DNA of 63,877 nt, filler included, from Octopus bimaculoides (lineage: Eukaryota): the NCBI RefSeq assembly GCF_001194135.2. It is 5 parts of 5 records of this genome, joined end to end, with 100 filler letters (N's around TTAATTAATTAA, not from the genome) between each part and the next. Parts side by side here need not be neighbours in the genome. Positions count along the whole stretch, not along the records: positions 62,558 to 63,877 come from NW_026396673.1; 4 more parts are not named here. One strand, written 5' to 3'. Shown in pieces: positions 62,558-63,877 of this stretch. Position numbers and translations under genes: made by a program. How positions within the stretch are numbered: the stretch's first letter is position 1; each line of letters begins with the position of its first letter. The notes under the pieces were generated by a model. The model saw only the letters and a program-made list of their open reading frames with translations. It did not search any database and was not told the origin of the DNA.

Positions 62558-62977
62558 TTCAGCAATAATCTGTTATTTCGAACATAAATGTGAAAACGAA
62601 ATGAAGCAATAAGATACTTATCAAAAGCAGACAAACGAAGGAACTGACACCAGACATGAGTTAGAAACATACGAATTCTCCAAAGGTTATATATTGCATC
62701 AAGAAAAAGAACACAGCAAATTAAAAGCTATGCATACATAGTCGCTTTGGAAGTCAGAATTACTAAATGTCATGTACGTTAATATAAACATACAGATATG
62801 CTCTAGATGTTGCATATCATTCCCCTCATCATCGTGTAGCACAGTTGGGTTGCTGTAACTACATGTATNNNNNNNNNNNNNNNNNNNNNNNNNNNNNNNN
62901 NNNNNNTTACATATTTCACGTGTAAACAGTGAAGCCAAACACTGAAAGCGAGCAAAATTATTCCCAAATAGACTCAC

Positions 62978-63007
62978 CAACTGTAGATTCAATTTCAGAT
63001 GGTTTTT
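62978..63007 (-). CDS. 30-nt symmetric phase-1 microexon (E)KPSEIESTV
   Basis: attttatatttcgtccag|AAAAACCATCTGAAATTGAATCTACAGTTG|GTGAGT. Confidence 0.85.
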
Positions 63008-63309
63008 CTGGACGAAATATAAAATATGGTACAATAAGTACATAGGTGAAATAATTTATACACAAACACATATTTGTGTCTAAAGGTTTTTAAATGCTTA
63101 CGCATGTTATTGTACATTATTATGTCTTAAATATGTATTTGTTATACTGATATTTACATTTACAAATTGTGTATGTTACTAAGCTTAACTGAAGCATATT
63201 TACCGCTTTTATTTACTCTTTTACAAATACTACAAATTTATTTGAACCAGAATTATTTCCTAACAATAAATTCAAAAATGCATAGGGAAACTTATCAGTA
63301 TGTGCTTAC

Positions 63310-63339
63310 CAATTCGGGATTCGGTTTCTCTAACAATTT
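63310..63339 (-). CDS. 30-nt symmetric phase-1 microexon (E)IVRETESRI
   Basis: CTAAC branch motif...attaattccacag|AAATTGTTAGAGAAACCGAATCCCGAATTG|GTAAGC. Confidence 0.85.
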
Positions 63340-63442
63340 CTGTGGAATTAATAATACCATGAGTTAGCTTTTGTCTTTATCAATTAGTAAAATGAACAAA
63401 GCTTTGCTCTCAATATATACGATTAAATCTACACGGATATCC

Positions 63443-63472
63443 CAATTCGGGATTCGGTTTCTTTAATAATTT
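63443..63472 (-). pseudogene. Duplicated 30-nt microexon (E)IIKETESRI without a canonical donor
   Basis: Intact acceptor ttccacag, but followed by GGATAT rather than GT. Confidence 0.6.
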
Positions 63473-63773
63473 CTGTGGAATTAACAACAGCATGAGTTAG
63501 CTTTTGCCTTTATCAATTAGTAAAATGAACATAGCTTTGCTTTCAATATATACGAATATTCGTCAGCAAACTTCTCTAGAAATTATTCTATTTTTGCATA
63601 CTATGGAGAAAATGATTTAATATTAAATATTTTAAAAGCAAATATGTCTTACATATTAGTTCATAGCTATGAAAATTATATACTTAATCTTTATTTGAAT
63701 AAATGTAACAGCTAAAAATATAAAGAATGATATACTAATATATTTTCATTGAAACTACTTAGGAAACACTTAC

Positions 63774-63803
63774 CAACAGTGGCGTCGACCTCAGAGGGTT
63801 GTT
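63774..63803 (-). CDS. 30-nt symmetric phase-1 microexon (E)QPSEVDATV
   Basis: ttttattctatgttcag|AACAACCCTCTGAGGTCGACGCCACTGTTG|GTAAGT. Confidence 0.88.
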
Positions 63804-63877
63804 CTGAACATAGAATAAAAAGATTGTGACAATAGAGAACTGACCTCCAATACAATGTAAAAACAAATATATGTAAA

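What the first reader, a model, noticed from the sequence alone, without database searches (positions are those of the whole stretch)
62978..63803. Array of homologous 30-nt phase-1 microexons encoding an acidic decapeptide repeat
Seen: within 830 bp, three segments are each exactly 30 nt, start AA, end (G/A)TTG, and have a pyrimidine-rich CAG acceptor and a consensus donor (GTAAGT, GTAAGC, GTGAGT). Spliced, they read EQPSEVDATV-EIVRETESRI-EKPSEIESTV; the first and third are clearly related (PSE[VI][DE].TV). They are invisible to the ORF track. Symmetric exons can be skipped in any combination without frameshift. Known: cassette PEVK exons of titin and schistosome micro-exon genes use this logic. 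Inference: a fragment of a modular, combinatorially spliced repeat protein. The E/V/T/S/P composition suggests a PEVK/PEVT-like elastic region of a giant muscle protein, but the identity is unproven.
Basis: partly seen in the sequence, partly recalled or inferred. Interest (0 to 1): 0.8.

Follow-up and report, generated by a model that had tools for sequence, protein, structure and literature searches.

The report
Array of 30-nt cassette microexons
A 0.8-kb stretch of an unidentified AT-rich eukaryotic genome carries three (plus one crippled) related 30-base mini-exons. Each would add ten acidic amino acids to a repeat protein that matches nothing in the searched databases, so the gene design is familiar and only the gene is unknown.

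Summary
Three segments of exactly 30 nt (63774-63803, 63310-63339, 62978-63007) are each bounded by a pyrimidine-tract CAG acceptor and a GTRAG donor. That arrangement is expected 0.07 times per shuffle and occurred three times in none of 5000 shuffles. The first and third exons are 21/30 identical while their introns show no similarity. Every exon ends in G and starts with AA, so any junction makes GAA (Glu) and any subset can be skipped in frame.

It lies in a recent 133-nt tandem duplication and has GG where the donor should be, so it is probably a dead exon.

These are most likely real phase 1-1 cassette exons of an acidic, Ser/Thr-rich, probably disordered repeat region that grows by tandem exon duplication.

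The titin/PEVK identification is not supported. Pro is 7% and Lys 3% of the residues, there is no Pfam match, and there is no homologue in any of the three protein searches. No transcript evidence, source organism or flanking domains could be obtained, so alternative splicing remains inferred. This is a new member of a known kind, of modest interest.

The parts
63774..63803 (-). Microexon E1 (type A), 30 nt, phase 1-1, encodes (E)QPSEVDATV. Acceptor ...ttattctatgttcag lies at 63804-63823 and donor GTAAGT at 63768-63773.
63443..63472 (-). E2', a duplicated copy of E2 (28/30 identical, would encode EIIKETESRI). Its acceptor and CTAAC branch site (63496-63500) are intact, but GGATAT follows where the donor should be. 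Downstream GTs would give 38, 40 or 52 nt, so none is an in-frame cryptic donor. Probably a dead or decoy exon.
63309..63558 (-). Recent tandem duplication: two 117-nt copies (63442-63558 and 63309-63425) with 9 mismatches, separated by a 16-nt filler GATATCCGTGTAGATT (63426-63441). Each copy holds 86 nt of upstream intron, the 30-nt exon and 1 nt beyond it.
63310..63339 (-). Microexon E2 (type B), 30 nt, phase 1-1, encodes (E)IVRETESRI. Acceptor ttccacag; CTAAC branch-point match at 63363-63367, 25 nt upstream; donor GTAAGC at 63304-63309.
62978..63007 (-). Microexon E3 (type A), 30 nt, phase 1-1, encodes (E)KPSEIESTV. Acceptor tatatttcgtccag; donor GTGAGT at 62972-62977.
63473..63773 (-). 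Intron of 301 nt, 24% GC, between E1 and E2'. The functional intron is probably 63340-63773 (434 nt) if E2' is not used.
63008..63309 (-). Intron of 302 nt, 25.5% GC, between E2 and E3. It shows no detectable similarity to the 301-nt intron (z 0.1-0.5).
62869..62906 (.). Assembly gap of 38 N, 71 nt downstream of the E3 donor. It limits what can be said about the next exon.

Best explanation
The piece is an internal fragment of a minus-strand, spliceosomal, protein-coding gene of an unidentified AT-rich, non-vertebrate-like eukaryote.

The gene encodes an acidic repeat region rich in Glu, Ser and Thr, with Val or Ile present, and probably intrinsically disordered. Each decapeptide module is carried by its own 30-nt phase 1-1 exon.

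Two module types are visible: A = E-[QK]-P-S-E-[VI]-[DE]-[AS]-T-V and B = E-I-[VI]-[RK]-E-T-E-S-R-I. Their order is A-(B')-B-A.

Every exon ends in G and starts with AA, so any exon-exon junction re-creates a GAA Glu codon. The array can therefore be lengthened or shortened, by exon skipping or by duplication and deletion, without changing frame or junction residue.

The array grows by tandem duplication of exon-plus-intron units. The old duplications have kept only the exons similar. The newest one, the 133-nt unit, produced a copy that lost its donor and is probably non-functional.

What is shown: the exon anatomy, the selection signature, the symmetry and the duplication. What is inferred: actual splicing, cassette use, disorder, and a length-tunable spacer or linker role. 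The purine-rich GAR codons may also act as exonic splicing enhancers that help define such short exons (inference from general knowledge of ESEs).
For: - Exon anatomy: three exact YAG-N30-GTRAG units lie on one strand against 0.073 expected, with 0 of 5000 shuffles reaching 3. Pyrimidine fraction upstream of the acceptors is 0.60-0.75, and a CTAAC sits 25 nt upstream of E2.
- Conservation confined to exons: E1/E3 share 21/30, while positions +7..+30 downstream share 4/24 and -30..-11 upstream share 8/20. The 301-nt and 302-nt introns are unalignable, with z of 0.14 global and 0.49 local.
- Composition: E1 (57% GC) and E2 (37%) are clearly richer in GC than the introns (24-26%); E3 and E2' are 30%.
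- Symmetry: all four copies start with AA and end with G.
- Duplication: the tandem duplication is documented.
- Peptide properties: net charge is -6 per 30 residues, on the disordered side of the charge-hydropathy boundary.
Against: There is no expression evidence of any kind. No protein among 5.8 billion clusters shares even three 5-mers with the spliced peptide. The exhaustive HMMER scan of 1.84 billion representatives found nothing. No related DNA turned up in the metagenome, GTDB-genome or IMG/VR contigs.

Only three intact exons are visible, so the statistics on codon positions rest on nine differences. A second frame (phase 0) is also open in all exons. The B-type exon is only marginally similar to the A type. 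The source organism and the rest of the gene are unknown, and the assembly is a draft with a 38-N gap.
Confidence: 0.65

Rival explanations
1. The exons belong to the elastic PEVK/PEVT-like spring region of a titin-family giant muscle protein (titin, sallimus, projectin/twitchin, TTN-1).
For: Symmetric, repetitive, Glu- and Val-containing cassette exons are the design of vertebrate titin PEVK and of insect projectin PEVK regions, which are alternatively spliced from many small exons, one as short as 24 nt (PMC6469411; PMC3835035). P+E+V+K is 50% of the 30 residues, above the 40% cut-off that one study applies to 250-aa windows (PMC12063666).
Against: Pro is 7% and Lys 3%, so the PEVK score is carried by Glu. 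With Ala counted, the whole 30-aa peptide scores 0.53 and exon E2 0.40, under PEVK_Finder's 0.54 per-exon cut-off, while E1 and E3 score 0.60. There is no PPAK or other Pfam hit. No similarity to any protein was found, titins included. Drosophila sallimus PEVK is encoded by very large exons, not microexons. Flanking Ig/Fn3 exons cannot be examined.
Confidence: 0.08
2. It is part of a micro-exon gene (MEG)-like gene: a small secreted protein whose coding region is made mostly of tiny symmetric exons, varied by exon skipping, as in schistosomes and other flatworms.
For: The exon size and symmetry fit the MEG definition: tandem, symmetric exons in multiples of three, 6-36 bp, with introns from 0.1 kb (PMC3961193; PMC10526429; PMC4350168). 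MEG-4.1/Sm10.3 is reported to have tandemly repeated exons encoding repeats (title of Davis 1988, cited). Low GC and a CpG o/e of 0.79 are compatible with a flatworm but not specific to one. MEGs are routinely missed by annotation.
Against: No similarity to any known MEG protein was found. MEG exons within a gene are mostly 15 bp and of unequal sizes, whereas here they are uniform 30-nt homologous units. Signal peptide, terminal exons and taxon are unobservable. The acidic hydrophilic peptide differs from the hydrophobic, 'sticky' MEG composition described.
Confidence: 0.12
3. It is a relic array: exons of a decaying or silent gene, or exonised repeats that are no longer or never productively spliced.
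For: One of the four copies (E2') has demonstrably lost its donor. Protein and transcript-derived databases are completely silent. It is a short draft scaffold.
Against: Three copies retain consensus donors, acceptors, the exact length and an open frame, although their introns have diverged to saturation. Differences between E1 and E3 avoid second codon positions. That pattern requires long-term purifying selection.
Confidence: 0.1
4. It is a chance arrangement or a non-coding repeat, and the apparent exons are not functional units.
For: Short AG...GT intervals are common in AT-rich DNA. Other 30-nt AG..GT intervals exist in the piece.
Against: None of 5000 shuffles gave three YAG-N30-GTRAG units. 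The 21/30 identity is above every shuffle. The similarity stops at the splice sites, and the other AG..GT intervals have poor signals and no homology.
Confidence: 0.05

Closest known systems
Vertebrate titin PEVK exons and insect projectin PEVK exons
   Same: Arrays of short, homologous, in-frame cassette exons encode a charged, disordered repeat. They are prone to tandem duplication, poorly annotated by gene finders, and their length is tuned by exon skipping (PMC6469411; PMC3835035).
   Different: The unit is 10 aa/30 nt, against about 28-aa PPAK exons (own knowledge). The composition has very little Pro and Lys and much Ser and Thr. There is no PPAK or Pfam match and no sequence homology. 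No Ig/Fn3 context is available.
Schistosome micro-exon genes (MEGs), especially MEG-4.1/Sm10.3
   Same: Symmetric micro-exons of 36 bp or less in multiples of three, separated by introns of 0.1 kb or more, allow variant proteins by exon skipping.
   Different: MEG exons are mostly 15 bp, heterogeneous and non-homologous within a gene. Their products are small, secreted and rather hydrophobic, and are restricted to platyhelminths. None of these features could be verified here, and no homology was found.
Tropoelastin and avian fast troponin T 'P' exons (own knowledge, not tested here)
   Same: In tropoelastin all exons split codons the same way (phase 1-1), so any exon is a removable cassette. 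Chicken fast TnT has a run of homologous 15-nt exons, each encoding an acidic or His-rich pentapeptide, produced by exon duplication.
   Different: These are vertebrate genes with different composition and exon sizes. The present DNA is 29.5% GC with CpG o/e 0.79, which is not vertebrate-like, and the peptides are unrelated.

Membership tests
Titin-family PEVK region | High P+E+V+K(+A) content: about 70% in human, with a 0.54 per-exon PEVK_Finder cut-off | tested here: inconclusive
   PEVK+A is 0.60 for E1, 0.40 for E2, 0.60 for E3 and 0.53 overall. Pro is 0.07 and Lys 0.03, so the score is driven by Glu (cut-off from PMC6469411).
Titin-family PEVK region | PPAK-type repeat motif or detectable homology to titin, sallimus, projectin or twitchin | tested here: not met
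   No Pfam family reached its cut-off and PPAK was not listed. There were 0 hits in 1.84 billion representatives and none in the word-indexed searches.
Titin-family PEVK region | Embedded between Ig/Fn3 domain exons of a giant gene | not testable with these tools
   Only 1320 nt are available, and the piece was not found in any searchable DNA collection.
Schistosome-type micro-exon genes (MEG) | Very small symmetric exons, multiples of 3, 6-36 bp | tested here: met
   Three intact exons of 30 nt, all phase 1-1. Definition.
Schistosome-type micro-exon genes (MEG) | N-terminal signal peptide, small secreted product, and most of the CDS in 10-20 micro-exons | not testable with these tools
   The gene ends lie outside the piece.
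Schistosome-type micro-exon genes (MEG) | Platyhelminth origin, or similarity to one of the 25 MEG families | tested here: not met
   No protein similarity was found. The taxon is unknown.
Spliceosomal cassette microexon (generic) | Canonical acceptor (pyrimidine tract + YAG) and donor (GTRAG) flanking an open, frame-preserving segment of 51 nt or less | tested here: met
Spliceosomal cassette microexon (generic) | Presence in mature transcripts, with alternative inclusion | not testable with these tools
   No transcript data for the unknown source. Protein databases that include transcript-derived assemblies gave nothing.

The most novel reading that the evidence does not exclude
The exons belong to a so-far unannotated protein family, absent from all searched protein collections because gene finders miss it. 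The protein would be built largely from uniform 30-nt cassette exons, decapeptide 'beads' joined by an invariant Glu junction codon, in a non-flatworm organism. That would be an independent invention of the MEG or PEVK design, with the module number tunable by splicing and by exon duplication.
Probability: 0.25. Interest if true: 0.55.

Novelty: new member of a known kind. Interest (0 to 1): 0.3.

Why it matters
If the exons are expressed, this is another clean example of a repeat protein assembled from symmetric microexons, caught in the act of exon duplication, with one fresh copy already disabled. It also illustrates coding sequence that standard annotation and protein databases miss.

It would matter more if the full gene proved to be a large array or a new secreted or elastic protein family. 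With only 1.3 kb, no organism and no transcripts, it does not open a long-standing question.

Tried and rejected
**Protein and peptide searches**
- Word-indexed search of 5.8 billion proteins with the 40-aa spliced peptide: nothing.
- The same search with a 16-row alignment of synthetic recombinants of the observed residues: 5 word candidates, none with E <= 10.
- The same search with the alternative phase-0 reading: nothing.
- Exhaustive phmmer against 1.84 billion representatives: 0 hits.
- Exact look-up of 10 ORFs of the piece, to find the source contig: none is in the collection.
- Pfam and PDB sequence scans: nothing above cut-off.

**DNA and RNA searches**
- Degenerate DNA pattern for type-A exons: 0 hits in metagenome, GTDB-genome and IMG/VR contigs.
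- A relaxed pattern gave one hit, L001. It is the end of a long exon in an unrelated contig and is at the number of hits I estimated for chance, about 1-4.
- Rfam and tRNA scans: nothing meaningful.

**Literature**
- Searches for the peptide strings and for '30-bp exons' gave nothing relevant.
- DeMarco 2010 and Davis 1988 are not held.

**Rejected readings**
- Phase-0 frame: 6 of the 9 E1/E3 differences would fall on second codon positions.
- A cryptic in-frame donor for E2': none exists.
- Other AG..GT intervals as extra exons (63653-63682, and the 24-nt segment upstream of the GTAAGC at 63101): they have poor acceptors, no homology, or a stop at the junction.

Full report
**1. What is there**

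The piece (62558-63877; 1282 called bases, 29.5% GC, 38-N gap at 62869-62906) reads as eukaryotic intron-rich DNA. The reported features lie on the minus strand. A mechanical scan for AG-N30-GT finds three segments:
- E1, 63774-63803: cag|AACAACCCTCTGAGGTCGACGCCACTGTTG|gtaagt
- E2, 63310-63339: cag|AAATTGTTAGAGAAACCGAATCCCGAATTG|gtaagc
- E3, 62978-63007: cag|AAAAACCATCTGAAATTGAATCTACAGTTG|gtgagt

Upstream pyrimidine content is 0.60-0.75, and E2 has a CTAAC branch-site match 25 nt upstream.

**2. Is it more than chance?**

Yes, on several counts.
- YAG-N30-GTRAG occurs three times on the minus strand and never on the plus strand. Dinucleotide-preserving shuffles give 0.073 per sequence (both strands), and none of 5000 gave three.
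- Three of the five GTRAG sites on that strand are these donors.
- E1 and E3 are 21/30 identical. No 30-mer in 300 shuffled pieces reached 21 matches to E3, and the fixed-register binomial P is about 7e-6.
- The similarity stops at the splice sites. For E1/E3, positions +7..+30 after the donor share 4/24 and positions -30..-11 share 8/20.
- The 301-nt and 302-nt introns cannot be aligned better than shuffles, with z of 0.14 and 0.49.
- A phase-0 frame is also open in every exon. It would put six of the nine differences on second positions, and it has no database match.

Conservation confined to an exact 30-nt open segment between consensus splice signals, with a third-position bias, is the signature of exons under purifying selection.

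**3.

A fourth copy, E2' (63443-63472, AAATTATTAAAGAAACCGAATCCCGAATTG, EIIKETESRI), lies in a tandem duplication (TRF period 133, 92% matches).
- The two 117-nt copies (63442-63558 and 63309-63425) differ at nine sites, seven in the 86 intronic bases (8%) and two in the 30 exonic bases (7%). They are separated by a 16-nt filler.
- The duplicated block ends one base after the exon, so E2' is followed by GGATAT instead of GTAAGC.
- Downstream GTs would give 38-, 40- or 52-nt exons, none of them in frame.
- E2' therefore keeps a perfect acceptor and branch site but has no usable donor. It is most likely a dead exon, possibly a decoy acceptor.

The visible order is A - B' - B - A. The exon starts are spaced 331, 133 and 332 nt apart, which suggests an ancient unit of about 331 nt whose intron sequence has since been randomised. 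That last point is inference.

The B type is only weakly related to the A type. It shares 16/30 with E3 (P about 0.006) and 12/30 with E1, which is not significant.

**4. How it most likely works**

All four copies start with AA and end with G. Any junction between members therefore makes GAA (Glu), and any subset can be joined in frame with the same junction residue. This is shown by the sequence.

The encoded 30 residues have net charge -6 and are 27% Glu and 23% Ser+Thr. They fall on the disordered side of the charge-hydropathy boundary.

I infer an acidic, disordered repeat (linker or spacer) region. Its length could be set by the number of included modules, and it expands by tandem duplication of exon-plus-intron units. 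The 133-nt duplication is a recent and apparently failed example.

Two further points are inference from general knowledge, not tested:
- The GAR-rich exons may double as purine-rich splicing enhancers.
- There is a recurring Ser with an acidic residue at +3 (SEVD, SEIE, SRI-E, STV-E), which matches the casein-kinase-2 type consensus.

**5. Identity**

Every outside search was empty.
- No protein among 5.8 billion clusters shares three 5-mers with the spliced peptide or with a 16-row variant alignment.
- The exhaustive HMMER scan of 1.84 billion representatives found nothing at E <= 0.001.
- Pfam and PDB gave nothing.
- Ten ORFs of the piece are not in the 15-billion-protein collection.
- A specific degenerate DNA pattern that matches both A exons found nothing in the metagenome, GTDB-genome or IMG/VR contigs, so the piece itself is not in them.
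- A relaxed pattern gave one hit at roughly the number I estimated for chance, inside a long exon of an unrelated contig.
- Rfam and tRNA scans gave nothing.

CpG o/e of 0.79 at 29.5% GC argues against a vertebrate but does not name a taxon.

**6. Comparison with known systems**

The design is that of cassette microexon repeat arrays.
- Titin PEVK has more than 100 short repetitive exons that are poorly annotated (PMC6469411).
- Insect projectin PEVK has up to 21 alternatively spliced small exons, one of only 24 nt (PMC3835035).
- Schistosome MEGs have symmetric 6-36 bp exons, mostly 15 bp, with introns of 0.1-5 kb and secreted products with a signal peptide.
- From my own knowledge, tropoelastin has uniform 1-1 phase, and avian fast troponin T has P exons (15-nt homologous exons).

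Membership in the titin family fails where it could be tested:
- there is no PPAK or Pfam match;
- there is no homology;
- Pro is 7% and Lys 3%;
- P+E+V+K+A is 0.53 overall and 0.40 for E2, against the 0.54 per-exon cut-off.

Drosophila sallimus encodes its PEVK in very large exons, so 'giant muscle protein' does not by itself predict microexons.

The MEG structural criterion (tiny symmetric exons) is met. Signal peptide, gene size, taxon and homology are either untestable or negative.

**7. Verdict**

The structural interpretation is well supported by internal evidence but unproven for lack of transcripts. The PEVK/titin label is unsupported.

This is a new member of a known kind of gene architecture, in an unknown gene of an unknown organism. 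Interest is modest (0.3).

The most novel reading that remains open is an unannotated protein family built from uniform decapeptide microexons outside flatworms and titins (probability about 0.25).

Noticed in passing
63443-63472 and 63426-63441 (minus strand): The duplicated exon copy E2' keeps an acceptor and CTAAC branch site identical to those of E2 but lacks a GT donor. The duplication breakpoint, with a 16-nt filler GATATCCGTGTAGATT, falls one base after the exon end. E2' could act as a decoy 3' splice site.
   Followed up: partly
63008-63309 and 63473-63773: The two long introns are 302 and 301 nt, and the exon starts are spaced 332 and 331 nt, yet the introns share no detectable sequence similarity. 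The equal lengths may be a relic of an ancient duplication unit of about 331 nt, or a coincidence.
   Followed up: partly
63774-63803 vs 62978-63007: The homologous exons E1 and E3 differ sharply in third-position GC. E1 has 5 of 9 codons ending in G or C and E3 has 0 of 9 (57% against 30% GC overall). No explanation was found.
   Followed up: no
62794-62852 (minus strand), just beyond the 38-N gap: A 59-nt segment, ttacag|CAACCC...CATATCT|gtatgt, has higher GC than its surroundings. Read in phase 1 after E3 it gives ATQLCYTMMRGMICNI and then a stop, so it could be a terminal exon or nothing. A different frame stays open for about 50 codons.
   Followed up: no
L001:243-279 (ERZ1740056 contig, minus strand): An unrelated eukaryotic metagenome contig has ...NQEQPSEIDQLL|gtaagt at the end of a long acidic exon. 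This single hit is about what I estimated chance would give for the relaxed pattern, and I judged it coincidental.
   Followed up: partly
62558-63877: CpG o/e is 0.79 at 29.5% GC, and the scaffold gap is 38 N, not a round number. This points to a non-vertebrate draft genome assembled from short reads with estimated gap sizes.
   Followed up: no
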